A stretch of DNA of 64,000 nt from Octopus sinensis. Taxonomy: Eukaryota. Made by a program: the position numbers and the translations under genes. Shown one piece after another: positions 13,846-62,670 of the stretch (positions are counted from its first letter, which is position 1; each line of letters opens with the position of its first letter). The stretch covers positions 45,384,001 through 45,448,000 of the forward strand of contig NC_043003.1 in assembly GCF_006345805.1 (NCBI RefSeq), written 5' to 3'. The notes beneath the pieces were generated by a model. It worked only from the letters and a program-made list of their open reading frames with translations, ran no database searches and had not been told where the DNA came from.

Positions 13846-14039
13846 TGTATGTATGTATGTATGTATGTATGTATGTATGTATGTATGTATGAATGTATGT
13901 ATGTATGTTTGTATGTACGTATGTGTGTACCTATACGTATTCATATATATACCTATGTATATATGTGTGTATATATTTATATGTATGTAAGTATATAAGT
14001 GTGCATGTGTATATATATATGCATGTATGACATGCCTTC

Positions 14040-15040
14040 AATTGCTACGATGACCACCCTTGCTAGCTATGCAGATGACACAAAAGTCTCCCACGCAATA
14101 CAAAACCTGAAAATATTGCGCATCTGCAACATGAGCTGGACACAATATACAGGTGGGCTGAGGACAACAACATGCAGTTTTATGCAGGTAAGTTCCAGGC
14201 CCTGCGCTACTGGCACACAAAGTAAATGACGTGAAGACTGGATACACTGGCCCAGGAAGAATTGCAATCCCTGAGTCAAAATCAGTGCGTGACCTGGGCA
14301 TTGACATGAGCAATGATGCATCTTTCCAAATGCATATTGCTAATCTGGTGAAAAATGCAGACGGCTAGCTGGATGGATTCTCCGAACTTTCAGAACAAGA
14401 GAGAAGGAGACACTGATGGTCCTATGGAAAACATTTGTCCTCAGCCGCTTGGACTACTGCTCCCAACTTTGGTCACCACACAATATAAAACAAACAGCAG
14501 AACTCGAAGCAACTCAGAGAAGCTACACAAAGAAAATCGTCTCAATGCAAAATGTCAGCTACTGGGAAAGACTGAAGGTATTAAACTCTTCTCCCTGGAG
14601 CGGAGGCGGGAGAGATATGCAGTGATATACATCTGGAAAATCCTGGAGGGTCTTGTCCCGAACTTTGGCATTCAAAGTTACCCAACCGCAGAACGGGGCG
14701 CCGCTGTGTGGTGGTGCCAAGGATTCCAACATCACCATCAAAATACAGGTCCAGATACTGCAACAGCTTGGGTTTCAGAGGACCACAGCTCTTAACATCC
14801 TCCTAAATGCCTGAGAGACTTACATGGTGTGGATGTGGGTTCTTTAAAACTAAACTGGATCTCTTCTTGTTGGGAGTCCCAGATGAACCTACCTCACGAC
14901 AGAGACAAGGATGCGGGCAGCAGCATCGAACTCCCTTGTTGATCAAGTGCCACGTTATCAGAGGTGGATTCACAAACTAGTGGCTCATTCAGCGGTGGTG
15001 CCCCAGCATGGCCGCGGCCTTCGGGCTAAAACATTTTTTT
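14040..15040 (+). mobile_element. 5'-truncated CR1-group LINE (RT C-terminal part and 3' end), frameshifted
   Basis: Encodes YADDTKV, VRDLGIDMS, LSRLDYCSQLWSP, YWERLKVL..SLERRRERYAVIYIWKIL. Ends ggtggtgccccagcatggccgc. Confidence 0.9.
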
Positions 15041-15365
15041 TAAGGATATATATATATATATGTAGACATGTAGATTGTATTTATATATGTAGATATATAT
15101 GTATGTATTTATATATATGTGTGAATTTATATGTGTATATGTATGTATATATGTATGTATATATATGCATTTATGTATATGTACGTATATCTCTGAGTAT
15201 ATACATATGTATATATATATACATGTATGCATATGTCTTTTTGAATTCATATATATATATGTATTATGCATGTGTATATGCATGTATATATATACACATA
15301 TGTATATGCATGTGTATATGCATGTATATATATATGTATATATAAACAATAAATGTATATAGATA

Positions 15366-21399: not shown

Positions 21400-23400
21400 T
21401 ACCAACCACGCCACCACCTTTTTTTTTTTTTTTTCTTTGAATGCCACCACACTACTTCCTACCTATCACCGCATTTAATGAATATCAGGATTACATCTCA
21501 TTTCCGCAATCCCCATCGCACCTTCACCATCGCTATCTTTGCTTGCACCCTCAATAAAAACCTTCGCAAACATGACAAAGGATGTACCACCAGAACTATG
21601 CAACCTCCATCATTCTACAACCACCGCCACCACTACAGACACAACAGACACCATCCTCTTTCCATTCCTTTTTCACTTTATCATCATCATCGTCGTCGTC
21701 GTCGTCGTCATCACCATCATTTCCTTTATAACTATCGTCATCATCACAATTGCCATCGTCCCCACCACCACTTCCAAGACGGAAGTCTCCTCTCATCGCC
21801 GCTATCTTCACTGTATTATAAACATTGCCGTTAACACCTTTACTACTACCGATACAGTTGCTGCGACCGCTACTACTACTACTAATAATAATAATAATAA
21901 CACCACATACTCAACTATCAGGACCAACACTATCACCAATACATTTATTACCATCAGCAGCGCCACCAACGGCACGAACTAGGTTACCAACACCTACACC
22001 ACTACGCGTACGACCCTTGTGGCTAATAAAGGAAAGATTATTATAACCCACCATCATTGCTACTACTACTGCTGCTGCTATTACTACTAGTAGTGGTAGT
22101 AATACTAGTACTACCACCACCACCACTACTACTATCTACTACTACTACTACTACTACTACCACTACTACTGCTTCTTCTCCTGCTGCTAGTTCTACTTCT
22201 AACTTCAGTAAACTTAATTACATATCACCTTCAGTTCAGTTATCACTACTACTACCACCAATACCGCCTGCACCACCACCACTAATTCCAGTATTTCTGC
22301 TATAAAAACATGCCACTGTTTCAGTAACCACTCCCACGCCATTACCAATAACCCATTTACAACTACCACTACAAACACGACCACCCACACCACCATCACT
22401 GCCACAACCTCAACCACAACACTACGATGCTCTCGCCACTACTACCATACTGCCACCACTACTATCAGCATCACTACCGCTACTAAGACATCCATCACTA
22501 TTGGCCACTAACACCACCAATACTAGAGTCACTGCTCTCAACAAGACTGCCAACTAAACACCCGCCACGTCAGCCACCCCCCGTCACAACCACCACTATC
22601 ACCACAACTAGCATTATCACTACCATAGCTACCACAACAACAGCCACTACCATCATCGCTACAGCTGTTACTACCACCATAACCACCACCAACTCTACCA
22701 CTAACTACTACCACAATCACCAACACCACCATAGCTATCACCATCACTATCACCACTACCACAACCACCATTATCACTACCAGCAGCACCATAGCCAACG
22801 TCATCACTACCCCAACACCACAGTCACCACCATCACTACCATAGCTATTACTACCACTACAACCACCACTGTTTCTACCACTAACATCACAAACCACCAC
22901 CATCACTATAGCCACTACCATCACTGCCACCACCACCATAGCCACCACCATCACTACCACCAAAACCATAGCCAGCATCTTCACCTAAGCCATTACCATC
23001 ATCACCACAGCTATTACTACCACAACAACCACCACTGTTTCTACCATTAACACCACAACCTCCACCACCGCTACCACCATCACTATAGCCACCATCATCA
23101 CTACGACCACTATCACAGCCACTACCGTTACTACCACCAATACCTAAAGCACCACCATCACCACCACAGCTACTAACACCACCAAAACCACCACAGTCAT
23201 TACCACCAACACCATAGCCACCACCACAACCATCACTATCACCACTACCACAACTAACACCATCACTACCGCCACCACCACCACCACCACCAAGACGTCC
23301 GCCACCGCAACTGTTCCCATTAACTTCACTAATACCACCACCACCAGTACAGTACCACTACCCACACCACCACCACTGACACCACAACTAACTCTTCCAC
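21400..23400. repeat. About 2-kb trinucleotide low-complexity tract (CAC/TAC/CAT/AAC)
   Basis: Continuous acc/act/atc-based sequence with recurring sub-blocks such as atagctattactaccac and accaccactgtttctacca. Confidence 0.9.
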
Positions 23401-23974
23401 CAATATCACATAAAACAATCTAACAAATGTCCTTTCTCTACGGTTTAGTGTCTATATCAAGATTACAACAGCAAAGCACCCACCACCACCCACCATCAAA
23501 TATCACGGCTCACTTCACACAGACTATCCTATCGGCCTTATTGAATCATACGAACAAAAGAAACGAAAAACTCCTAAATTCAATCAGTCATTGCAATTAT
23601 TTTTCTTTTTAATTTTATATGTAACATTTTTTTTTTTTTTTTTCTTCTGTCACTGTATTGTCGTTCCACTGCATCGCTGTACCTTATCATTCCCTTTCGT
23701 TCAAGACTGAAAACTGACACGATTTTTCAAACGTGTCCCTGATGATAGGAAAAAAAATACTGGTGCCCAAGACATGTACAGCACTAAACAACTTAAATAT
23801 CCCAACCACATCTACTTCTCTCTTTCTTTCTCCTTCCCTCCCTTCTCCCTCCCTCTCTCTCTCTCTTCCTCTTTCTCTCTCTTTTGTCATTTACATCCCT
23901 TTAAGTCTATGTTTGTGCGTATGATAAAACTATAAATATATTCCCCGCATGTCCGCATAAACACGAACACATGA

Positions 23975-24350
23975 CTGACTGTGTGGTAAGAAGTTTATTC
24001 CTCAACCACATGGTTCCGGGTTCTGTCTCACTGCGTAGCACTTTCGGTAAATGTCTTCCACTACAACCACGGGCCGATCAAATTCTTGTGACTGGATTTA
24101 GTAGACGGAAACTGAAAGAAGGCCGTCGTATATACACGTGTATGTATTCCTATGTCTTTTTGTCCAATTCCACCGCTTAACGACTAGTGTTGGTATGTTT
24201 ACGTATACGTACTTAGCGATTCAACATAAGAGCCAGAAATAATAAGTACTAAGCTTAAAGGCAGTATTGTTGTCGATTCGTTCGACCAAAATAGATCTCT
24301 TCAAGGCGGTGCACCAGCACGGTTACAGTCAATTATTTGTAACAAGTAAA
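23975..24350 (+). mobile_element. Composite SINE family C/B, diverged
   Basis: ctgtgtggtaagaag...ggttccgggttc...gacggaaactgaaagaag...aaggcggtgcaccagcac. Confidence 0.8.
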
Positions 24351-25124: not shown

Positions 25125-25618
<494 letters not shown>

Positions 25619-30255: not shown

Positions 30256-30922
30256 ATTGGGCGGCATTTTTCACTTATCTCCCGAACCTGTTTTCCTCTG
30301 TTTCATTACAATCCTGGCAACTGTTCAAACCTCTCCCACTCTTTCTTCTGGACATGTACAGCCTATCGGTGTCACTTTTAAGGTGGAAGGCTCCGAGCAC
30401 TGTCAACATCATTTTTTGTCTTCGTATCCCAGTTCATCAGTTCTTTCTTTTTGCCATTTTCTAATTCCAACTCTATACCGAAGTGATGCTATCATCCAAG
30501 TATTAATTGCTTAGATTTTATTCAGCTGTTCTTTAATTTCCTTCTCCATTGTCTTGTTGAACTCTAGTTTGTCCATCTATTTGTAGCCTTCCGTTTCAAT
30601 TTGCTTAATCAGTTCTCTATTCGGTAATTCTATTACTACAAGAGTATGTATCTTTCTTCTTGTGAGCTAGATTATTCCAAACTTCATTAGGTCCGAATTC
30701 CATTCTAATATCAGTACTAAAACAGTGGGCTGTGTTCAACAAGGCTGTGTTCACTTGTGTCTCATCCTTGCCATACAGTTTCAAATCATCCATGAAGAGG
30801 AGATGGTTGATTCTTTGGGGTTTTCCTTTTAGTTGATATCACAGGTTCATTTTCTTAAGTACCAAGGTCAGAGGGATCATACAGAGAACAAAAAGCAACG
30901 GAGATAAGCTATCACCCTATTT
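30256..30922 (-). mobile_element. R4/Dong-clade LINE, RT part, decayed
   Basis: Encodes GDSLSPLLFVLCMIPL, NHLLFMDDLKLYGK, KSDTDRLYMSRRKSGRGL. Confidence 0.85.
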
Positions 30923-31744: not shown

Positions 31745-31949
31745 TCTCTTTACTCTTTTAGTTGTTTCAGTCATTTGACTGTGGCCATGCTGGAGCACCA
31801 CCTTTAATCGAGCAACTCGACCCCGGGGCTTATTCTTTTGTAAGCCCAGTACTTATTCTATCGGTCTCTTTTGCCGAACCGCTAAGTAACGGGGACATAA
31901 ACACACCACCATCGGTTGTCAAGCAATGCTAAGGGAACAAACACACACA

Positions 31950-31990
<41 letters not shown>

Positions 31991-32155
31991 CGACGAGCTT
32001 CTTTCAGTTTCCATCTACCAAATCCACTCACAAGGCTTTGGTCGGCCCGAGGCTATAGTAGAAGAGACTTGCCCAAGGTGCCACGCAGTGGGACTGAACC
32101 CGGAACCATGTGGTTGGTAAACAAGCTACTTACCACACAACCACTCCTGTGCCTA
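31745..32155 (-). mobile_element. Composite tRNA-derived SINE (head, internal microsatellite, CR1-like tail; family C/B)
   Basis: Head ggttccgggttcagtcccactgcgtggcaccttgggcaag; internal (TA)n/(TG)n; tail ggtgctccagcatggccacagtcaaatgactgaaac. Confidence 0.9.
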
Positions 32156-34446: not shown

Positions 34447-34960
34447 GACTACTAAGACTACTACGACTACTTCTACTACTACTACTACTAACATTATTGT
34501 TACGGTTATTGATTTTATCGTTCTTCCTGTTGTTCTTTTTAATATAATGCTTTTCTTTTTTTATGATTGCCATCTCTAGCCCAGTAGGAGTCAACGAGTT
34601 AGCATCGTATTTCTCCTATTTTCCGCTCTAATGCACACAATTCGGTAGAATTCATAAAACTTTGCCGTTTCAAATGTTAGAGTTGACTAAATCTCACAGA
34701 GCACAAACAGTGAAAGATAATGTTACCAAAAGTGAATCTTAGTAAAATTATTTTATGCAGGCTAATGGAGTTATTTTCTATAAAAAAAATATATTTATAC
34801 TATTTGGCTTAGCATCAAGGTTGGCCAGTTCATCATACATATTTGCTAAGCACATTTGCATTATAACTTTGATATTAAAGATTTATCTATCCATTAATAT
34901 ATATATATATGCATATATATATATATATATACATATGCATATATATATATATATATAATA

Positions 34961-35001
<41 letters not shown>

Positions 35002-35205
35002 TATGTATATATATATATGCACATATATACATATATATATGCACACATATATATATATGTGTGTGTGTATATATTTTTATATATATGTATATATGCATTT
35101 ATGCATATATAATATACATGCATATATACACATATAAGCATATATGTATATATTTATGCATATATATAAATACATATATATGCACATATATATGTATATA
35201 TATGC

Positions 35206-35263
<58 letters not shown>

Positions 35264-35372
35264 CATACATACATACATACATACATACATACATACGTAC
35301 GTACATACATACATACATACATACATACATACATACATACATACATACATACATACATACATACATACATAC

Positions 35373-36714: not shown

Positions 36715-37700
36715 TTAGTGACCATAGCTGGGCGCAATAGTCAATGTGGCTAAGGATAAATGTCCTCCAAACGACCATCATTGTTTCCTGTTCTCTCGTT
36801 TTAAAAGTTCTAAGAATTCATCTGGTCAGCCGCCCACATTTCATTGCCAACTTAGCAACATGCACATGGAAGGCTTTCTAGAAAGTCGATCGTGGAATAA
36901 TACGTCACGAACTGCGTGATCTCGGCAGATTCGTTAAATTTTTAGAATGTCTGCATGAATTTCTGAAAGATAGACGTCGAGCAGTAGTAGCCAACGGGTC
37001 CACCTCCAATGACATGCAAATATGAGCGGTATTCCGCAAGGCACCCTTTTGGGACTACTACTGTTTATAATGGCCCTCTCACATATGCTCTCAGCCACAC
37101 ATTCATATGAATGCCCAGGTTTCGCATTGACTGTGTCTCTGGGATTGCAATCCCTCCAAGCCCAGTGTATTTAATTGGAATTGCATTTAGTTTTGCATGC
37201 CGATAACATAGAGCTTGAAACCTTTCAACATTAAATATATTTCTTAGCCCACTTGTATATTTCATCTTATACATATTGCAGAGGCATAGCGTCTTCGGGG
37301 CTCTGTTTCACCTGTGAAACTTTTGTCTCATCTGCATAACTTGTGATCGTGGCTCTCTGTGTGGCTGAGAGCATATGTGAGAGGGCCATCTCGATGTCTA
37401 TCTTTCAGAAATTCGGGCAGACATTCTACCACTTAACGACTCTGCCGAGATCACGCAGTTTGTGACGTATTATTCCACGACCGACTTTCTCGAAAGCCTT
37501 AGCAAAATCGAGATTTATCACATGCACATTTGAGTGATAGAGCAGCTGTTTCCACACCCAGTCATAGTGTTGTAATAGCTGAGACAAGCAGCTACTTTGT
37601 AGTCGGAAACCATGTCGGGTGTCAGTTAGCAAGTAATTTTCCTCAAGGAACGTGGTTCGGTTTCTTTTGATTATTCGTTCCATGATTTTGTCGATGTATG
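36715..37700 (-). mobile_element. CR1-group LINE RT fragment with an internal inverted duplication
   Basis: The minus strand reads KPISLTS..HGFR..LDFAKAFEKV..YADETKV..NLGIHMN, then an inverted segment (36870-37100), then HVAKLAMKC..ILRTFKTRE..IDYCAQLW. Confidence 0.85.
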
Positions 37701-37720
37701 AGGTTAGAGAGATAGGTTTG

Positions 37721-37788
<68 letters not shown>

Positions 37789-40647
37789 TGTATCTACATG
37801 TGTGGTACATACGCATACGCACGTTTACACACGCGTGTGTGTGTTTGTGCGCGCGTGTGTGTGCGTGCGTTGCGTACGTGCGTGTGTGTGTTTGTTGATA
37901 TTTGTTAGCAGGGCCAATACGGCTAACGTTAAACACAGTGGTCGATACCCGAAGTCGATCTCATAATTTTTTTTCCTATGTTCCCGTATATAAAAACGGC
38001 ATCTGATACGCTATATTGACACATCGTGAACTAATGATTAGGTTACATGAACTTTATGGAAACAAAGAAAAATGGGAATTCCAAGGATTGTTGAGAGAGG
38101 AACGGCCTTAATATAATGTGAGACAAAGTCAATATCAGCTGGTTGATAAGTCCGAGAGCAGCAAAGAAAGTAGATCTTAGAAGAACTTTCAAACTCTCGG
38201 TGTTGATGGATATAGAGCGTCTTCTTGGGAATGGATATTTTCTCTGAGCAAAATCAATATTAGTCGTGACGAAACTCACAGATTTGTTTGTCTCGCAAGG
38301 CTACGAGTGGAGTAAGTAGACAGGTCGTTGATCTATGGATCAGATTTTTTTCTTTGTCACAAATGCGTATTAAGATTATGATTGGAAAGTTTGATTTTTT
38401 TTTTTTTATTTCACAAACTTGTATCAAGATTTAAGATTATCATTGGAAAACATGAAATGCCATCTGGTTTGTTGTTTAAAAGTTCAGTAGCCTAAAAATG
38501 CTATTATCTGTCTTCCAAAGCGCACATCTGATATACCAAAGGATCTCACATTATAATGTGTATGTGTGTGTGTATTGTGTGTGCCTGAGTGTGTGTCTGA
38601 GTGTGCGTGTATGCGGGGGGGGGAGTGATAGACGTGTTATTGCGTATCAAACGGGCCCGAATGAAATGTAGTGATGATTTAGGATAAAGCTGATGCTATG
38701 TTTAATGGGAATAGTCCCAGTGAGATAAAACTAGCAGGTATATCGCGTTAATAAACGAACTGCAAAATTGTATACACTATTTTTGCTCTATCTTCCTCGT
38801 TTTCTCGCGTCTTTTATAGACCTTATTCAACAAAATATAAACCTAATTCAACAACTTTATGATAAGAGTGTTTGTTTTTTTATAAAAGATGATGTAATTC
38901 ACTGTGCTTGTTAAAAATTAATGTAATACTTTGACTCCGCCTTTGTGTTTGTTTAACATACACATCCGTCGTCCTTGAAAATTCTCACTTGTCTTTTTAT
39001 TGTTTCTTCTATGAAAATGGAGAATAAACCCAAGCAATAGTATTTATGAGGTTTATGACCCTACTGGGTCATAAGCCTCATAAATATTTTCGGTTGCATC
39101 CATTTGATTCATTTACTACTACAACTGCTCAGCATGCACACTGATGAAAAGAGATCTCCTGCCATGCTGATATGGTCTAGGGAAACGATAAAAAGAATAT
39201 AGTGAAATGGATAGGCTTAAACAGTAGCTCTTTTGAAACGGGTGGTTAGAAATAAACAATGACAAATTGAACAAATTAGCATTTTAACATTATCTTGTTT
39301 AAATGTGTTATGAAACGCAGACACATGACCATATTTTAGTTTCAATATTATTATATGTTTCCTGTATGTTTTATGTGTGTGTGTGTGTGTGTGAGCAGTA
39401 AAATTTGAATTGTATCATATGTATTACCTATATCGCAATTATGAAACTATTAGCAGAAAAGGTCAATTTTTTTCTGATACTTGAAATAACAATTTTTATA
39501 CTTGTAAAAGAAAGAAAAAAAAGAAGATGGTTAAGTAGAATATTGGAAGAGAAGTGAAAAGAGAGGAAAGCAAGGACAGGTGTAAGCTAGGTATGAGATT
39601 AAAAAAACGGAAAATTGTTGAAGCCAAAATAAGATGGCAGGAATAACTACTAATTTTCATGAAATCTAAATCATAACATCAGAATATAACAACCCCATAT
39701 TTACAAAAGAGTATTTGAACATTGTGAACAACCTGAAACTCGCGGAAAAATTACAACCTACGACCATACACAAGAGCTGATCAGAATTAAAATGATCCTA
39801 CAGAGTAACGATCAACCAAAAACATAACAGCTTTCATGAGCAAAATATAAGCCTCAATAATGTTAGTCAAAACCGGTCACCATATATCTACGTTGCATTA
39901 AAACCATATGGGTGAAATTTGAAAGATAGGTAGTCCATACACAAATAGGACATTATACAAAGAACGTCTACCATTCAGTGACATGCTTCGCAAAAAGTAT
40001 CTTTAAATGGGACTATGACAAGGAACTGCGCATATTCTTCTTGTAGATGTAGCGGTGAAGATAAAGGGACTATCTGCCGCGCCCTAAATTAAGGCTAGAG
40101 AAAAATCGTAAAACTTGGCTAATGCTTTGTGGAAAGCAATGATAAATCACCAAGTCAAAATAATAGACAGAGAACAACAATTGAAGATAAAGCGAGTGAA
40201 AGACTGAGCGCGTATGCACGGCTTTTTTTGTCATCTGGTCAGGTAGAACAAGAAGATGGGTACCATATGGAAACGTTTTCTCTTTCCGCTGTGAACAAAT
40301 ATTATACCTATCACCATAATACAGTTAGATATAGAGCTCTTACTTTTCATAACATAATATTCCTAAATGACCTTTCGGAGTGACTATATACGCAATTGTT
40401 ATAGTGTAGAAGTTTAATTAGCTGGTGAGCATAAGTTCAATCCCTGGGTTAGTAATTGGGAAAGGCATACAGATCAGTACAAACTTCTGAGGTTGATTAA
40501 ATAAACGATTTGTACCAAAATTTTGAGAAAATTACCGAATATAACGGTAACCTGAAGATCGCTGGGGAATATAACAGAGAATACATACATAAACACATAA
40601 TACCTTCATAATACATACATACATACATACATACATACATACATACA

Positions 40648-42415: not shown

Positions 42416-43394
42416 TGTGTCTCTTTATATAAAACTACTTATATGTTCACAGAAAGAAACCTTGGTAGTTGCTGCAAGCTTTTGTGAAGTATGATTGCAC
42501 GAATTTTTTGATAATACAAAACGATGTTGTTTAACATATATAAATAAGTTAAAGATATTAAAGTTGCTAGATGTTGTGATGCTTACTGTGATGCTTACCA
42601 AACACTGGTAAAGAAGGAAGTACAGAATTAAATAGTGAAGTTTTCGGTCCAATATAGCACAAAGAAGAAACGATGTGAGGCATAATATAGCAATAGAATG
42701 AAATTTTAGTGAAATAGTGCACGGGTGCGTATGAGTATGTGCAATGTGTATTTGAATATAGATGCACACTAACGGCTTGTGAAATTAATTTTAAAAAAAT
42801 CGATATTTGAGAATTAAAATTTCTGTTTGTAACAGCGATTGTTAAGAAAAACTGATGAAAATCATATCAGACATTTAATGTTATGAAATTAATTAAAGGG
42901 TAGGATATAGAGATGATATTTTTACAAAAAGCAATTTAGATGTACAGTATACTCTTGAACATTTAAAGTATTGCTATGCTCTAATCTGCATTTTGTATAT
43001 TTTAACAAGGTATCGCTCACAATATTTTAATTTTTGTTACGAGTAAAACTATAATACAGTATACAAATTTATATAGGCATTTGCGAGCCAAAGATCTATC
43101 TAAATGATTATTCATTTCGCATCTATTGAAAGACTCTTTTGTGCCGTCAGCTTCGGAGAATAAAATTGTATTTCTACAGCGGACGATCTTTGATATTCGA
43201 ATGTACTCAAGTTACATATGATTTTACACGAATAAATTTTCCTCAACGCTGCTTCATGCGATTACTTCGTGACCCTAGTTTGACTAAATTTTACACACAT
43301 CAATATCCGTACTGTATACGTTTTCAATATAACAACGAATTCGTTTTGTTTTGTTTATTCTATATATACACAGGCATGTATTTGTATATATATT

Positions 43395-43700
43395 GTTTTG
43401 TTTGTTTCTTCTCGAGCCACGCCTGGCTCATAAGGGCTGGTTTCCCGGTTTCCTTGGCGTATAGGTTCCCCACCTGGATGGGACGCCGGTCCGTCGCAGG
43501 TGAACTGCAAGATGCAGGAGAAAAGAATGAGAGAAAGTAGTGGCGAAAGAGTCAGCAAAAGTTCGTCATTACCTTCTGCCGGAGCCGCGTGGAGCTTGGG
43601 TGTTTCGCTCATAAACACACACATCGCCTGGTCTGAGATTCGAGCCCGTGATCCCTTGACCGCGAATCCGCTGCTCTAAACACTTGGCCATATGCTTCCA
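43395..43700 (-). mobile_element. tRNA-derived SINE family D
   Basis: Reverse complement of 52916-53205, with a longer post-head segment. Confidence 0.9.
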
Positions 43701-43819
43701 CACACACACACATACACACACGCACACACACACACACACAACACACACACACACACACACCACACACACACACACAAACAAACATATATATATATGTGTG
43801 TATGTATGTATATATATAT

Positions 43820-48849: not shown

Positions 48850-49512
48850 TATTTTATACATAAGAGGGATCAGCCATCTGAATGTGGCTAGGGTCAGGGC
48901 GGGGTGGTGGGGGTGTTACTGATGCATTTAGCCCCAGGCAAACATCGACGTCACCAGAAGAGCTGACACCATCTCGGTGTCCTTGCCAGCCAGCAAAAGG
49001 AGATCAGCCTCCCCGAAGATACGGATACTACACACATTGCCTCTTGTCAACGTATGGTAAGCACCGCTCTTCGTTGAGGGACTTCCTCTGCAGGCTGGAT
49101 ATATATAGATTTTCACAGTAACCACAGTCACTGGCGTAGAAAATCTGTTCGAAACAATAATAAATCTCTGGGCGAGATATAAACAGTAACTGCTCTATAA
49201 CATAAGAGGGATCAGCCATCTGAATGTGGCTATAAATATATCCAGCCTGCAGAGGAAGTCCCTCAACGAAGAGCGGTGCTTACCATACGTTGACAAGAGG
49301 CAATAACCTCGAAACCGGTCCGTGTGTAGTATCCGTATCTTCGGGGAGGCTGATCTCCCTTTGCTGGCTGGCAAGGACACCGAGATGGTGTCAGCTCTTC
49401 TGGTGACGTCGATGTTAGCCTGGGGCTAAATGCATCAGTAACACCCCCACCACCCCGCCCTGACCCTAGCCACATTCAGATGGCTGATCCTTCTTATGTT
49501 ATTTTATACATA
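48850..49512. mobile_element. Short Penelope-like / retrozyme-like insertion with inverted pseudo-LTRs and a 13-bp target-site duplication
   Basis: Layout is A(48859-48890) B(48891-49104) spacer A(49201-49232) B'(49236-49466) A'(49467-49498). tattttatacata flanks both ends (48850-62, 49500-12). A hammerhead lies in B'. Confidence 0.7.
49281..49328 (+). ncRNA. Minimal type I hammerhead ribozyme with a U3-A8 core variant
   Basis: Stem I (CAUACG 49284-89 / CGUGUG 49321-26); core UUGACAA 49290-96; stem II GAGG/CCUC with loop CAAUAA; GAAA 49311-14; palindromic short stem III ACCGGU; GUC cleavage triplet, predicted cut after C49320. Confidence 0.8.
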
Positions 49513-49944
49513 TATTCAGGTATTTTGTGTGCTATATATACTTTTTATTTCATTTCCCTCTCTACTCACGTATCCTGACCTTTCTTATGTACAGCTCAGC
49601 ACAATTAACAAATTGTCCTTGTAATGTTCTGGCTCTTCACATTCTGATTTGAAATACAGCCGGGTCAAGTTTGCACTTCATCCTTTCGGGTTGATATACA
49701 CAGTCTATTGAGCACATGAGTTCATGGAATCGATTGATCCATACCTGTTTCAAACCGTTGCTCTTGTGCTTTTAAATTATCATAGTCGTCGTCATCATCA
49801 TCATTGTTTTGGTTTTGGCCTAGCGCCACCGAAATGCCAACCAGAGATGTCAAGGAAAAAGATTCTATATCTAAAGATGTTATCAGGTGAAGTGCCATGC
49901 AATCGAAGAATAACTGATATATGTGTTTTTAAAAAATTCACTAA

Positions 49945-51755
49945 TCGAGGATGATTGCAATTACATAAAGGTGAATTTACGAAAGATATATGTTGTACAT
50001 ATGAGCATGATCTTTTGCAGTTGTTTCATCTTGAAGATGTCAGGAATTTGGTCTACATATTTGTTTGCACCCTTTGATATCATTCCAAGTACCCCATTAA
50101 CAATGGGTGATGTGGGTGCTTTGAGATGACACATTCTTCTGATTTCTATCCCTACCACTTACTTTGCCCAATCTCAAAAATGTTTTTGATTGCAACATTA
50201 ATCAAAAAGCAAATATTTTAAAATGATTTTTCACATTCATATCTCGTCGATTAGCCTACTTTTCCTGGTCAGTCTCAACTCTGGAAATCTGAAGGATTAT
50301 AACTTCAGCTTTCTAGACAACTTGTGATGTTCCATGCCCCCCCCCCCAGTTATCATTGTGAGGGAGGTTGTATGTGCAGCATATTAGCCTGTATACGTAT
50401 TGAGCTGCTCTGATATGTCTTACCTTGTACACTGATGATGCCAGTCTTCTGCACTAAGACATTATGTGGTTGACTGTGTTTCGAACCTGATTTCAGCTGC
50501 CGGATCACAGCAAGGCGGTACACTGGTCTGCTTTAACGTTTCAGAATATTAATTATTCTGGTAATTCCTAGTTGGAAGGCACCAATCCTGAGCATCAATA
50601 ATATACTCCTCTGTTTCTGGATTGGGATCAGAGCTTGACAGTCAATGTTGGATAAGTGTTTGGTGAACATCAGAGCACTTTACTCCACTATATTTGGCTA
50701 TATTTTCATTTGTTTTGCCTTGAAATTTAGGGGCACAATCTCTTCGGGTACTGGTTCATCAAGGTACGTTTTTCGAAAGTATACTTTTGTTTTTCTTCAA
50801 TGAGTGCATCATTTCGGTATGTTCATCCTTAATATCCAGACATTCACTTTTTGCAAGTACGCGAAAAGTCCCACGGTTGCAACTTCCAATGAGATTTGAG
50901 ATTGTATTAACTCCTGACAATCTTCTTTCTCCGGAAGTTATAATTGGTCTATGTCAGCTTTTGAGTGAAACATACGATGAATTTTCGCGTTTTCGCATTT
51001 TGACAAAAACATTGTTGATGTCAGAGATGGACCACTTTATAAAATTGAATCTGTATGTCATTACAGGTATGACTAACGTGTTTTGGGCTTCAATTTTGTT
51101 TCCGGCAATCAACTCGATTTTCAGAATAGCACTTACTCTAAGACAGGACTTCTTTTGTATCTGTTGTCTCATCAGTGAATATTTAATTCTATCTCCTTCA
51201 CAGACTCCTTGATACTAATAACTTCTCTAATGACCTAATTCTTTTATTGCGGTAATTCTTTAGGGTGGTTTTGTATGTGTTTGATAGTTTCTCATTCACA
51301 AATATAGAATTAGCGCATTTGTCAAGCTGAAATACTATTTTAATGTCATCACTGAATTATTCAACTATGTGAAGAAGTGCTTACATTCACTGATCATTTT
51401 CGCAAACAGCTTCAAGTCGTCCATACAGAGAAGTTGTTTGATTGTTTTTCAATACATCTTGTATACGTTTGTTTCATGCAGAAGTTTATGTCAGGGAAAT
51501 AGTACACAACAAAATAACAAAGGAGATAATACGACTCCTTAGAATATTCCACAATTAATATTCACTTTTTCAGAGTTTATGATTGTTGTGTACATATTGA
51601 GAATTAATTTCGTTTTCCAAAGCTTCATGACACGTGATAAAAAAAAAAGATTCTTGATTATTCGTGAAAGTTTGAATGCCTCTAGGCATTCCTTTATACA
51701 GCTATAAGGAAGACTATCAAAGGACTTCTTGTAGTCTATCCAGGCCATTGGAATG
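49945..51755 (-). mobile_element. 5'-truncated, heavily decayed R4/Dong-clade LINE (RT to endonuclease end)
   Basis: Encodes MAWIDYKKSFDSLP, LSPLLF, NKIEAQNTLVIPVMTY, EIRRMCHLKAPTSPIVNGVLGMI, QKIMLICTTYIFRK. Confidence 0.85.
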
Positions 51756-51764
51756 GTTTTATCA

Positions 51765-51940
51765 TTATTGTTGTTGTTGTTACTATTCTGAAATCTGACA
51801 TACGTGACTTGTTGCTGGAGATGTCATTAAAGCACCAGCTGTTCATTTCTCCTAATCTAAAGGGGTACTTTCTTTTTAAGTCTCTAGAACTTTACTGAGT
51901 CTCCTTGCGCTGCCAAGTAATGCTGTTTTCTGAGTATGCT
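51765..51940 (-). mobile_element. Second R4/Dong 3'-end fragment with an (AAC/AAT)n tail
   Basis: Encodes QKTALLGSARRLSKVLET* followed by a short UTR and aacaacaacaataat. Confidence 0.7.
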
Positions 51941-52915: not shown

Positions 52916-53205
52916 AGTGAAGGCACATGGCCTAGTGGTTAGAGCAGTGGACTCGCGGTCGAGGGATCACGAGTTCGAATATCAGACTGGGCGATGTGTT
53001 TATCCACGCGGCTCCGGCAGAAGGTAATGGCGAACTTCTGCTGACTCTTTCGCCACAACTGTCTCTCACTCTTTCCTCCTGCATCTTGCAGCTCACCTGC
53101 GACGGACCGGCGTCCCGTCCAGGTCGGGAATCTATACGCCAAGGAAACCGGAAAACCAGCCCTTATGAGCCAGGCGTGGCTCGAGAAGAAGCTAAAACAA
53201 AACAA
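52916..53205 (+). mobile_element. tRNA-derived SINE family D with a 13-bp TSD
   Basis: A-box tggcctagtggttag, B-box gagttcgaat, ctgcgacggaccggcgtcccgtccagg. TSD acattacatgtat at 52903-52915 and 53206-53218. Confidence 0.9.
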
Positions 53206-56596: not shown

Positions 56597-57214
56597 TCAA
56601 GGCCATTCAAAATTCCGTTTGGCCATGCTATAAAACTTTGTGTTAAATGGTCGATAAAAGTCTCTTAACCTTTGTATTACACGTGGATCTATTACTGGGT
56701 GTTGTCGTCCTTTCGTTTTACCTAAGCAGTGCGGATGGCCGCTGCCTTCTACTTTTTTCAGACAAGGAAACCCCTTTGTTTCATTAAAGAAAAAATGTTT
56801 TTCGTTTATGACCCTTTTAAGTCCGAGAAAATCTTGTAATAACGTCATTTCTCCTGCAGGATCTGATATTAGTTTCTCTCCGCTTACAAAATGCATTTGT
56901 TCAAGTGGAAAATATTTCAACCATGACTGAAGATGTTTAGCGTAGACACCAATACGAATTGCTCCCCAAGACGTGTCCACAATTCGAGTGCTGTTATTCA
57001 CAAATGCCATTGTTCGAATTGTCTAATAGTGTGTCGTTTGGTCATAGTCTGTGTATAATCAGAAATTGCACGGGTGACCGGGTCGCGAACAACGACGATT
57101 AACTTAACATCTTTTGACATGCTGTGGATTCGACGAGGAACATCTCGCGTAATAAAATAACTTGGTGTTTTCTCCATGGTTATCTGCCCCTTAATTGTCA
57201 CCGGCATTTGGTTC
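56597..57214 (-). CDS. HS3ST3: Terminal coding exon of a heparan sulfate glucosamine 3-O-sulfotransferase (HS3ST2/3/4/6, Hs3st-B type), with a 1-nt frameshift at 57010-57011
   Basis: The acceptor ttttctttcgacag|G at 57215/57214 is followed by (R)[26 protein letters not shown]...[16 protein letters not shown] (PAPS 3'-phosphate-binding motif). After a frame change it continues [27 protein letters not shown]...KGFPCLKK...[12 protein letters not shown]...FYRPFN...FEWP*. The phase-2 intron just before MP..GQITMEK matches the two-exon HS3ST2/3/4/6 group. The upstream exon (KGGT motif) was not found in the window. The paralog symbol is approximate. Confidence 0.95.
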
Positions 57215-57494
57215 CTGTCGAAAGAAAATGAATGAAATGTATTATTAATAAATATTCAATATCAGAAGCATCGATAATACATTACAAAATAAACTAGCAG
57301 ATAAATATATAACAATAGCAGTATGACATTGGAATATAACAAGAAATTGTGAGTGAGGTTACAATAGACTGGAAATTGCATCAACACGTGACCAGTATAT
57401 AAAACGTTACATTATAATAAACTCGATAAGACTTAATTTCTGAACATATATGGGCAGCTTACTGTTAAGTAGAACAAGAAATAATAATGGTTTC

Positions 57495-62289: not shown

Positions 62290-62670
62290 TGGAACTGGCT
62301 GCGTGGCAAGTAGCTTGCTTACCATGTTCAGTCCCACTGCATGGCAACTTGGGCAAGTATCTTCTAATATAGCCTCGGGCCGACCAGAGCCTTGTGATTG
62401 GATTTGGTAGACAGAAACTGAAAGAATCCCGTCGTATATATCTATATTTATATAAGTGTGTGTATGTTTGTGTGTCAATGTTTGTCCCCCAACATCGCTT
62501 GACAACCGATGTTGGTGTGTTTACGCCCCAGTAAATTAGCAGTTCGGCAAAAGAGACCGATAGAATAAGTATTAGGCTTACAAAGAATAAGTCTTGGGAT
62601 CGATTTGCTCGACTAAAAGCGTTGCTCGAGCATGGCCACAGTCAAATGACTGAAACAAGTAAAAGAGTAT
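62290..62670 (+). mobile_element. Composite SINE family C/B
   Basis: Same head, microsatellite and tail order as 31745-32155. Confidence 0.85.

What the first reader, a model, noticed from the sequence alone, without database searches (positions are those of the whole stretch)
48850..49512. Hammerhead ribozyme with a compensatory U3-A8 core inside a short fold-back retroelement
Seen: a 660-bp insert bounded by a 13-bp direct repeat, with layout A-B-spacer-A-B'-A'. B' contains a complete minimal type I hammerhead (49281-49328): stem I, UUGACAA, GAGG/CCUC stem II, GAAA, palindromic ACCGGU stem III and GUC. Established: the hammerhead core is CUGANGA with a C3-G8 tertiary pair, U3-A8 is a compensatory alternative, and minimal hammerheads with palindromic stem III occur in Penelope-like pseudo-LTRs and are thought to act as dimers. 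The double covariation argues against a chance match and would be missed by searches requiring CUGANGA. The inverted left copy lacks exactly the 17 nt aacctcgaaaccggtcc, and that deletion ends 1 nt from the predicted cut site. Inference: this is a cephalopod Penelope-like or retrozyme-like family with an active variant ribozyme.
Basis: partly seen in the sequence, partly recalled or inferred. Interest (0 to 1): 0.9.

Follow-up and report, generated by a model that had tools for sequence, protein, structure and literature searches.

The report
Hammerhead ribozyme in fold-back octopod retroelement
A 642-bp mobile-element insertion in an octopod genome, laid down as two head-to-head copies, carries a real hammerhead self-cleaving RNA motif whose unusual U3-A8 core pair is a natural variant already published in 2011 and 2014, so this is a new example of a known kind.

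Summary
A 13-bp direct repeat (48850-62 / 49500-12) brackets a 642-bp insert. Its arms (48858-49107, 49233-49499) are 98-99% complementary. The right arm holds a complete type I hammerhead: core 49284-49326, extended helix I 49268-49343, cut after C49320. The left arm lacks exactly 49305-49321.

The motif is not chance. It is the only descriptor hit in 64 kb, against 0-0.02 expected per shuffled window. It also aligns to Rfam Hammerhead_HH9 at 26.9 bits, below the gathering score, including the UUAC internal loop and CAAUAA loop 2.

The design is the canonical metazoan type: 6-bp helix I, 4-bp helix II, 1-bp helix III capped by palindromic CCGG, which depends on dimer formation.

The architecture matches published Penelope-like insertion signatures: identical outward 3' ends, a 33-nt terminal block, a 13-bp AT-rich duplication, no poly(A) and no ORF. 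This points to priming on both DNA strands.

Natural U3-A8 covariation is already published (Perreault 2011; Cervera and de la Peña 2014, about 1,300 hits in Schistosoma). The host is an octopod near Argonauta.

Not shown: other family copies, covariation, a partner RT/GIY-YIG gene, or activity. At this locus cleavage in cis is unlikely. Verdict: new member of a known kind, modest interest.

The parts
48850..48862 (.). Left copy of the 13-bp target-site duplication TATTTTATACATA. It is 12/13 A/T. Its last 5 nt (ACATA) are also the first 5 nt of block A, so the duplication could be read as 8 bp plus 5 nt of microhomology.
   Evidence: D3
48858..48890 (-). Block A, left terminus (33 nt). Read on the minus strand it is the 3' end (A') of the left copy. 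It is identical to the internal block at 49200-49232.
   Evidence: (D1, I1)
48891..49107 (-). Body of the left copy (B), the inverted duplicate of 49233-49466 without the 17 nt.
   Evidence: (I1, I2)
49014..49072 (-). Hammerhead remnant in the left copy. It keeps helix I, UUGACAA and the 5' half of helix II. It lacks the helix II 3' strand, GAAA, helix III, C17 and N1.1. The deletion junction lies between 49035 and 49036. It gives no Rfam hit.
49108..49199 (-). Unique 92-nt 'spacer'. On the minus strand it lies between an A' block and the body. I infer it to be the 5' part of a roughly 359-nt unit.
   Evidence: the unit assignment is inference
49200..49232 (-). Internal copy of block A. On the minus strand it is an A' block directly upstream of the spacer. 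It may be the end of an upstream unit or a 'tail'.
   Evidence: (D1, I3)
49233..49466 (+). Body of the right copy (B'), with no spacer-equivalent sequence at its 5' end (inferred 5' truncation).
49268..49343 (+). Complete type I hammerhead with extended helix I. The outer helix pairs 49268-79 with 49330-43. The internal loop is UUAC (49280-83) opposite UAG (49327-29).
   Evidence: HH9 26.9 bits; MFE -26.3 kcal/mol, z -3.56
49284..49326 (+). Hammerhead core. Helix I is 49284-89/49321-26. U3-A8 sit at 49290/49295. Helix II is 49297-49300/49307-10 with loop 49301-06. GAAA is 49311-14. The palindrome ACCGGU is 49314-19. The predicted cut is after C49320.
49305..49321 (+). The 17 nt present only in the right copy (aacctcgaaaccggtcc).
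49440..49466 (+). AC-rich tract (aacacccccaccaccccgccctgaccc) directly upstream of the terminal block.
   Evidence: The comparison with the AC-rich reverse-transcription start region of a Penelope-like element (PMC11167929) is inference.
49467..49499 (+). Block A', the 3' terminus of the right copy. It differs from the other two A blocks at one position. It contains a 6-bp stem-loop that is not significant.
49500..49512 (.). Right copy of the 13-bp target-site duplication.
   Evidence: D3

Best explanation
This is one retrotransposition event of a short, non-coding retroelement that carries a hammerhead. The element is either a Penelope-like-element derivative or a retrozyme-like non-autonomous element mobilised by a Penelope-like RT/endonuclease.

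Proposed mechanism (inferred):
1. A staggered cut was made 13 bp apart in AT-rich DNA.
2. Both freed 3' ends primed reverse transcription at the same site of the element RNA, the end of block A'. On the top strand a 5-nt ACATA/UAUGU microhomology may have helped.
3. This gave two head-to-head copies with identical outward-facing 3' ends, joined in the middle, with the 13-mer duplicated outside.

The two copies differ in extent. The left copy, read on the minus strand, is A'-spacer'-B'-A'. That is slightly more than one unit of about 359 nt, as expected from a tandem, circular or terminally redundant template. The right copy (B'-A') is 5'-truncated.

The right copy keeps a complete type I hammerhead of the canonical metazoan design. 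It has a 6-bp helix I extended through a UUAC/UAG internal loop, a 4-bp helix II with a CAAUAA loop, and a 1-bp helix III capped by palindromic CCGG. It carries the known U3-A8 covariant of the C3-G8 core pair. Such motifs cleave only when two copies pair through helix III.

Shown here: the sequence architecture, the motif and its statistical significance, and the cephalopod host.

Inferred: the dual-strand priming, the unit length, and the Penelope-like partner.

Not shown: catalytic activity. At this locus cleavage in cis is unlikely. There is only one intact motif, and a read-through transcript would lock it in a 250-bp hairpin.
For: Architecture:
- The 13-bp duplication, the 98-99% inverted arms and three copies of the 33-nt block with the same boundary.
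- Both outer termini end at the same nucleotide of the same sequence.
- There is no poly(A) or simple-repeat tail, no tRNA-like part and no conserved ORF.
- The internal A block is identical to the left A, while the right A' differs at one base. This fits the two left-copy blocks coming from one template.

Hammerhead:
- It is the only descriptor hit in the window, against 0 in 300 shuffles for the strict descriptor and 0.02 and 0.005 per shuffled window for the looser ones.
- The Rfam HH9 alignment scores 26.9 bits, E 2.2e-5 for the 81-nt scan, or about 0.02 scaled to the window. It matches UUACC, loop 2 CAAUAA against CAAAAA, CGAAACC...GGUCC and GUA.
- The deleted left copy gives no hit.
- The MFE z-score is -3.56, with 0 of 200 shuffles folding as well.
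- Cofolding of two copies forms the ACCGGU:ACCGGU helix III.

Literature:
- Penelope-like insertions are 5'-truncated, often carry an adjacent inverted 5'-truncated copy, and have a 30-40-bp 'tail' (PMC8557442).
- A purified Penelope-like protein cleaves and extends both DNA strands at AT-rich sites. It starts reverse transcription internally at two sites that bound the tail, in an AC-rich region downstream of the hammerhead (PMC11167929).
- Pairs of hammerheads 100-700 bp apart on opposite strands, and U3-A8 cores, were seen in Schistosoma Penelope-like elements (PMC4209133).
- Canonical type I hammerheads sit in 170-400-nt non-autonomous retrozymes thought to be mobilised by Penelope-like elements. 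The axolotl HHR_Amex1 has the same 1-bp helix III with a palindromic tetraloop (PMC7229834).
- The hypothetical 359-nt unit folds as a circle with z about -2.9.
Against: - No second copy of the element exists in the window, and none could be retrieved elsewhere. Family membership, termini and covariation rest on one locus.
- No RT or GIY-YIG ORF of Penelope type was found in the window. The only RT fragments look LINE-like. That survey covered selected ORFs, not every frame.
- The Rfam score is well below the HH9 gathering score (26.9 against 52). The hit appears only when a short stretch is scanned with lax filters.
- The tandem arrangement that defines metazoan retrozymes is absent.
- The junction between the two copies and the role of the internal A block can be drawn in more than one way.
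- The 5-nt overlap between the duplication and the element end leaves an 8-bp duplication formally possible.
Confidence: 0.6

Rival explanations
1. The insert is a fold-back or MITE-type DNA transposon with terminal inverted repeats of about 250 bp and an 8-bp duplication (TATTTTAT). The hammerhead-like segment is a passenger, either captured from a retroelement or decayed.
For: The long, nearly perfect terminal inverted repeats and the flanking direct repeat. No coding capacity. No RT nearby.
Against: - The direct repeat is 13 bp. Reading it as 8 bp needs a 5-nt coincidence, about 1 in 1,000.
- The extra internal copy of the 33-nt terminal block and the unique 92-nt spacer are not explained.
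- The termini (ACATAAG...) do not resemble hAT-type ends (own knowledge).
- Published Penelope-like insertion structures predict the architecture without extra assumptions (PMC8557442, PMC11167929).
Confidence: 0.12
2. A single 5'-truncated retroelement copy inserted conventionally, and was later turned into an inverted duplication by replication or repair (fork stalling and template switching, or hairpin-mediated duplication).
For: The arms differ by only 3 substitutions and 2 indels. TA-rich microhomology (CTATA...) lies at the inner junctions near 49100-49110 and 49230-49240.
Against: The 13-bp duplication brackets the whole fold-back. Both outer ends stop at the same nucleotide of the same block. 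That is what one event with two priming sites would give, and an unlikely result of a later local duplication.
Confidence: 0.12
3. The hammerhead match is a chance resemblance in an unrelated repeat.
For: - It was found by eye with a relaxed core (U3/A8 allowed).
- The Rfam score is below the gathering threshold, and the hit is absent from the standard scans.
- The strict descriptor is expected about 0.5 times by chance in a genome of a few Gb (my estimate).
Against: - Expected hits per 64-kb window are 0.02 or fewer.
- Features outside the descriptor also match: the UUAC internal loop, the CAAUAA loop 2, G10.1-C11.1, an outer helix I extension, and z -3.56.
- The motif sits in a retroelement-type insertion, where such motifs are known to live.
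Confidence: 0.05
4. The locus is itself an active retrozyme source that produces self-cleaved, circularised RNA.
For: The inferred unit size (about 359 nt) and a self-paired circular fold fall in the range published for retrozymes (PMC7229834).
Against: - There is only one intact hammerhead. The second lies on the opposite strand and lacks 17 nt. No monomer can be excised by two cuts.
- Helix III needs a second copy.
- A transcript of the full insert folds into a hairpin of -556 kcal/mol that sequesters the motif.
Confidence: 0.05

Closest known systems
Canonical metazoan type I hammerheads of non-LTR retrozymes (newt satellite 2, axolotl HHR_Amex1, Schistosoma Sm-alpha; Cervera and de la Peña 2020, PMC7229834)
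   Same: A 6-bp helix I continued through an internal loop. A 4-bp helix II with a 6-nt CAA..A loop. A single-base-pair helix III capped by a palindromic tetraloop, which makes the motif dimer-dependent. The carrier is non-coding, a few hundred nt long, with GC near or below 50% and a duplication longer than 4 bp.
   Different: The copies here are inverted, not tandem. Only one motif is intact. The core is U3-A8 rather than C3-G8. No expression or circular RNA data exist.
Minimal hammerheads in pseudo-LTRs of Penelope-like elements, including the U3-A8 variant of Schistosoma Cercyon (Cervera and de la Peña 2014, PMC4209133)
   Same: The U3-A8 covariation of the core pair. A palindromic helix III region. 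Occurrence as pairs 100-700 bp apart on opposite strands and as isolated truncated copies.
   Different: Those motifs have a long helix II (6-8 bp) with a bulged base, a short helix I (4-5 bp) and no recognisable loop-loop contacts. This one has the canonical helix sizes and loops.
Penelope-like element insertion structure (Craig et al. 2021, PMC8557442; Frangieh et al. 2024, PMC11167929)
   Same: 5' truncation, an adjacent inverted 5'-truncated copy, an optional terminal block of 30-40 bp (33 nt here), an AT-rich target, an AC-rich tract next to the terminal block, a hammerhead roughly 100-180 nt upstream of the copy's 3' end, and no poly(A).
   Different: No RT/GIY-YIG ORF lies in the insert or in the window. 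The unit is only about 359 nt. The link to a particular autonomous element is untested.
Rfam Hammerhead_HH9 (RF02275), the intronic hammerhead of amniotes
   Same: The best-scoring Rfam family. It shares the UUACC, CAA.AA, CGAAACC/GGUCC and GUA elements.
   Different: The score is 26.9 bits against a gathering score of 52. The helix III hairpin of HH9 is absent, the core is U3-A8, and the context is a transposon, not a conserved intron.

Membership tests
Hammerhead ribozyme, type I | Core strand C3 U4 G5 A6 N7 G8 A9 | tested here: met
   The sequence is UUGACAA (49290-96). U4, G5, A6 and A9 are canonical. Positions 3 and 8 are U and A, the Watson-Crick covariant of C3-G8, which is documented as natural and active in vitro (PMC3088659, PMC4209133)..
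Hammerhead ribozyme, type I | Core strand G12 A13 A14, the A15.1-U16.1 pair, and H17 at the cleavage site | tested here: met
   GAAA is at 49311-14, U16.1 at 49319 and C17 at 49320.
Hammerhead ribozyme, type I | Three helices around the core, with helix I open and a G10.1-C11.1 pair | tested here: met
   Helix I is 6 bp plus an outer extension. Helix II is 4 bp, GAGG/CCUC, with G10.1-C11.1. Helix III is 1 bp in the monomer and 6 bp (ACCGGU:ACCGGU) in the predicted dimer.
Hammerhead ribozyme, type I | Loop-loop tertiary contacts between helices I and II | tested here: inconclusive
   The UUAC/UAG internal loop and the CAAUAA loop 2 align with the corresponding HH9 consensus elements. The contacts themselves cannot be tested from sequence.
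Hammerhead ribozyme, type I | Rfam gathering score for a hammerhead family | tested here: not met
   There is no hit at gathering thresholds. The best score is HH9 at 26.9 bits against 52.
Hammerhead ribozyme, type I | Site-specific self-cleavage | not testable with these tools
   This needs in vitro transcription of monomer and dimer constructs.
Hammerhead ribozyme, type I | Covariation of helices and conservation of the core across homologues | not testable with these tools
   No homologous copies could be retrieved.
Penelope-like element (autonomous) | A single ORF with a telomerase-like RT and a GIY-YIG endonuclease | tested here: not met
   The longest ORFs in the insert are 79 and 70 aa, with no homologues. 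The ORFs scanned in the window gave only a LINE-like RVT_1 fragment and a sulfotransferase.
Penelope-like element (insertion signature) | 5'-truncated copies in tandem or inverted arrangement, a 30-40-bp tail, a variable duplication at an AT-rich target, and a hammerhead near the 3' end | tested here: met
   The insert shows inverted head-to-head copies, a 33-nt terminal block, a 13-bp duplication that is 12/13 A/T, and a hammerhead 179 nt from the 3' end. The criteria are taken from PMC8557442 and PMC11167929.
Metazoan non-LTR retrozyme | Tandem direct repeats of 170-400 bp, each with a type I hammerhead | tested here: not met
   There is one intact motif. The second copy is inverted and deleted. 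A 359-nt unit is only inferred.
Metazoan non-LTR retrozyme | Expression as linear and circular RNA of unit length | not testable with these tools
   No transcriptome data are available here.
Fold-back / MITE DNA transposon | Terminal inverted repeats with a duplication of fixed, superfamily-specific length | tested here: inconclusive
   Inverted repeats are present. The duplication is 13 bp, or 8 bp plus a 5-nt coincidence. A single copy cannot show whether the length is fixed.

The most novel reading that the evidence does not exclude
The 17-nt gap in the left copy may be a fossil of ribozyme action. In this reading the template RNA had self-cleaved after C17. Reverse transcriptase ran to the new 5' end and jumped onto the upstream fragment inside loop 2. 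If the junction T is read as a miscopied C1.1, the deletion spans 49304-49320 and ends exactly at the cut site. That would be genomic evidence that a U3-A8 hammerhead cleaves in vivo during retrotransposition of a Penelope-type element. A recent in vitro study found cleavage dispensable at this step and could not detect it in RNA-seq (PMC11167929).
Probability: 0.07. Interest if true: 0.6.

Novelty: new member of a known kind. Interest (0 to 1): 0.3.

Why it matters
It adds an octopod example to the known link between type I hammerheads and Penelope-type retroelements. It also shows the U3-A8 core variant in a motif of canonical (retrozyme-type) architecture rather than the minimal Penelope type. 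The single insertion displays, in compact form, the product expected if both strands of a staggered cut prime reverse transcription. That step was seen in vitro only in 2024. On the practical side, CUGANGA-only descriptors and Rfam gathering thresholds miss this motif, so cephalopod genomes may hold an uncounted hammerhead family. None of this changes current understanding unless the family proves abundant, conserved and active.

Tried and rejected
- **Rfam at gathering thresholds on the whole window, and E-value mode on 1.4 kb:** no hammerhead hit. Only the 81-nt scan shows it. The whole-window E-value scan is swamped by more than 200 microsatellite-driven microRNA false positives.
- **Other copies in the window:** blastn with word size 9 found nothing beyond self-matches. 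The joined flanks have no paralogous empty site.
- **Copies elsewhere through called ORFs:** the 70-aa ORF and a three-frame translation of one strand of the insert, pasted as one query, found no protein homologue.
- **Metagenome scan** with TTGACAAG-N12-CGAAACCGGTCC: one hit in a TARA scaffold. It is GC-rich, bacterial-looking sequence without helices I or II, so it is chance.
- **Viral-contig scan** with a looser pattern: three hits. I read only L003. It lacks helix I on inspection. L004 and L005 were not examined.
- **tRNA-like or SINE head:** none.
- **The 16-nt near-copy of the element terminus at 49575-49590:** it lies within the chance distribution.
- **A Penelope RT/GIY-YIG gene in the window:** Pfam scans of 30 selected ORFs gave only Sulfotransfer_1 and one sub-threshold RVT_1. 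Not every frame was scanned.
- **Papers on hammerheads or retrozymes in cephalopods:** none found in the held library. Supplement searches were empty.
Full report
**1. The observation**

- The 13-mer TATTTTATACATA occurs at 48850-48862 and 49500-49512.
- Between the two copies lie 48858-49107 and 49233-49499 as inverted arms. One pair is 178 nt at 98% complementarity and the other 72 nt at 99%.
- A 33-nt block (A) is direct at 48858 and 49200 (100% identical) and inverted at 49467.
- A unique 92-nt stretch (49108-49199) lies in the middle.
- Aligning the two arms shows three substitutions, a 2-nt TA indel at the inner boundary, and one 17-nt indel.
- The right arm has aacctcgaaaccggtcc (49305-49321). 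The left arm does not. The placement cannot be slid in either direction.

**2. The hammerhead**

All parts are in place on the + strand of the right arm.
- Helix I: CAUACG (49284-89) pairs with CGUGUG (49321-26).
- Core: U3 U4 G5 A6 C7 A8 A9 (49290-96).
- Helix II: GAGG/CCUC, with the conserved G10.1-C11.1 pair and a CAAUAA loop.
- Second core strand: G12 A13 A14 A15.1 (49311-14).
- Helix III: the tetranucleotide CCGG, then U16.1 and C17 (49320).

A descriptor that allows either C3-G8 or U3-A8 finds this site and no other on either strand of the 64-kb window. The same holds when the descriptor is widened to minimal Penelope-type motifs.

Chance expectations are low.
- In 300 dinucleotide-preserving shuffles of the window, the strict descriptor never hit.
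- A relaxed descriptor hit 0.02 times per window.
- The widened descriptor hit 0.005 times per window.
- My analytic estimate for the strict descriptor is about 1e-5 per window and about 0.5 per genome of 2.7 Gb.

Rfam gives an independent check. Scans at gathering thresholds and a 1.4-kb E-value scan do not report the site. An 81-nt scan with laxer filters aligns 49271-49343 to Hammerhead_HH9 end to end at 26.9 bits. The E-value is 2.2e-5 for that search, about 0.02 when scaled to the window. The gathering score is 52.

The alignment matters more than the score. Outside the core it matches three features:
- the UUACC that opens the internal loop of helix I;
- the CAA.AA loop 2;
- the GUA on the 3' side.

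These are the elements that form the loop-loop contact in canonical metazoan type I hammerheads.

Further checks agree.
- The deleted left copy gives no hit in the same test.
- The 76-nt segment folds to -26.3 kcal/mol, z = -3.56, with none of 200 shuffles folding as well. The fold has a long helix I interrupted by the internal loop, plus helix II.
- Two copies cofold with the 6-bp ACCGGU:ACCGGU helix III.

I conclude the motif is a real hammerhead by descent. It is of the canonical kind rather than the 'minimal' kind: helix I of 6 bp, helix II of 4 bp, and helix III of 1 bp with a palindromic tetraloop.

**3. The carrier**

The insert has no conserved ORF, no tRNA-like part and no poly(A) or simple-repeat tail.

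Both outer ends stop at the same nucleotide of the same block. The left end, read on the minus strand, and the right end, read on the plus strand, both finish ...GGCUGAUCC(C/U)UCUUAUGU-3'. They differ only at the one A/A' position noted above.

The insert is therefore two copies placed head to head with their 3' ends outward, inside one 13-bp duplication of an AT-rich target (12 of 13 bases are A or T).
- The left copy, read on the minus strand, is A'-spacer'-B'(minus 17 nt)-A'.
- The right copy is B'-A'.

Because A' is followed directly by spacer' in the left copy, the simplest template is a unit of spacer' + B' + A' = 359 nt. That template would be tandem, circular or terminally redundant. 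The two A' blocks of the left copy are identical to each other and differ from the right one at one base. This is weak support for their coming from one template.

An AC-rich tract (49440-49466) lies directly upstream of A'.

**4. Comparison with what is published**
- Craig et al. 2021 (PMC8557442) describe Penelope-like insertions as heavily 5'-truncated and often in partial tandems. [quoted passage not shown]
- Frangieh et al. [quoted passage not shown] Reverse transcription starts internally at two sites that bound the tail, in an AC-rich stem-loop downstream of the hammerhead. Hammerhead cleavage is not needed for insertion in vitro.
- Cervera and de la Peña 2014 (PMC4209133) saw pairs of hammerheads 100-700 bp apart on opposite strands in Schistosoma.
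- Cervera and de la Peña 2020 (PMC7229834) place canonical type I hammerheads in non-coding retrozymes of 170-400 nt and propose Penelope-like elements as their mobilisers. The axolotl HHR_Amex1 has exactly this helix III and works as a dimer.

The locus fits these descriptions point by point. Priming from both strands of a staggered cut explains the fold-back, the identical ends and the duplication in one step. This mechanism is my inference from one locus.

**5. The U3-A8 core**

The pair is present in both arms, so it predates the insertion. It is not new.
- Perreault et al. [quoted passage not shown]
- Cervera and de la Peña 2014 found the same covariation in Cercyon Penelope-like elements. 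A U3-A8 descriptor retrieved about 1,300 hits in Schistosoma mansoni.
- A8 could also have arisen by CpG decay of C7-G8 (own reasoning). A second, compensating change at position 3 with every other core base intact argues for selection in the source element.

**6. Activity**

Nothing here tests activity. Published minimal and 1-bp-helix-III motifs cleave poorly or not at all as monomers (PMC4209133, PMC7229834).

At this locus there is one intact motif. The other is on the opposite strand and lacks half the core. A transcript across the insert is predicted to form a hairpin of -556 kcal/mol in which the hammerhead strands are paired with the left arm. The locus is best seen as a dead-on-arrival product of a possibly active family.

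**7. The 17-nt deletion**

The deletion removes the helix II 3' strand, GAAA, helix III, C17 and N1.1. It ends one nucleotide past the predicted cut. If the junction T is taken as a miscopied C1.1, it ends exactly at the cut.

A template jump from the 5' end of a self-cleaved RNA would give this result. However, there is no microhomology, the landing site is internal, and a random 17-nt deletion in a 250-nt arm would place an end within a nucleotide of the site a few percent of the time. I keep this as the most novel reading that is not excluded, at about 7%.

**8. Host and surroundings**

The window encodes heparan-sulfate 3-O-sulfotransferase-like exons at 56600-57255 on the minus strand.
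- They are 100% identical to a Logan contig of run SRR11869391.
- They are 96% identical to an Argonauta hians protein.
- A protein 88% identical clusters with one from Octopus bimaculoides.

The host is therefore an octopod near Argonauta, and 'cephalopod' is supported. The insert lies about 7 kb beyond the stop codon of that exon, on the opposite strand. The RT fragments seen in the window look LINE-like (and reading). No Penelope-type ORF was seen.

**9. What could not be done**

No second copy of the element could be obtained. There is none in the window. There is none among 5.8 billion protein clusters by translated search. One metagenome scan returned a chance bacterial match.

It remains open and is the first of the decisive next steps.

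**10. Verdict**

This is a real hammerhead of canonical metazoan design with the already published U3-A8 core variant. It sits in a fold-back, duplication-flanked insertion whose anatomy matches Penelope-type retrotransposition, in an octopod genome. It is a new member of a known kind. Interest is modest (0.3), because the core variant, the dimeric helix III, the opposite-strand pairs and the insertion architecture are all in the literature.

Noticed in passing
window 56600-57255 (-): Two adjacent ORFs encode a heparan-sulfate glucosamine 3-O-sulfotransferase-like domain (Pfam Sulfotransfer_1, E 2.5e-20). They are 96% identical to Argonauta hians GAB1600030.1, and a protein 88% identical clusters with an Octopus bimaculoides protein. 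This identifies the host as an octopod near Argonauta.
   Followed up: yes
window 37429-37824 (-); also 13999-14792 (+), 30620-30838 (-), 50957-51823 (-): Decayed reverse-transcriptase fragments of LINE type. The first gives RVT_1 at 24 bits. The others are recognised only by eye (YADD/FMDD-type motifs). None looks Penelope-like.
   Followed up: partly
window 43393-43701 (+) and 52917-53205 (-): Two copies of an unidentified repeat of about 310 bp, 84% identical and in inverted orientation, on either side of the region that holds the hammerhead element.
   Followed up: partly
window 25226-25435, 31937-32148, 62296-62475 (-), 23973-24132 (-): Four copies (76-86% identical) of another interspersed repeat of about 200 bp, next to TA/CA microsatellites.
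   Followed up: partly
whole window, e.g. 15161-15338, 13877-14031, 34894-35370: More than 200 sub-threshold cmscan matches to mir-297, mir-3149, mir-1277 and mir-466 fall on TA/CA microsatellites. These are false positives and show that E-values for repeat-like families are unreliable in this genome.
   Followed up: no
window 22001-24000: GC content rises to 44% with a GC skew of -0.64. This is a C-rich simple-repeat block.
   Followed up: no
window 49575-49590: A 16-nt near-copy (14/16) of the element's 3' terminus, CTGACCTTTCTTATGT, lies 76 bp downstream of the insert. Its score is within the chance distribution (95th percentile).
   Followed up: yes
window 49440-49466: An AC-rich tract (aacacccccaccaccccgccctgaccc) lies directly upstream of the 33-nt terminal block. 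It recalls the AC-rich reverse-transcription start region, and the C-rich telomere-complement stretches, described next to hammerheads in Penelope-like elements.
   Followed up: partly
L003 2195-2226 (-), L004 7841-7875 (+), L005 2772-2806 (+) (IMG/VR contigs): Three viral-contig matches to TTGANAAG-N(10-16)-CGAAACCGGTC. L003, from a giant-virus MAG, can form a 5-bp helix II but has no helix I. L004 and L005 were not examined.
   Followed up: partly
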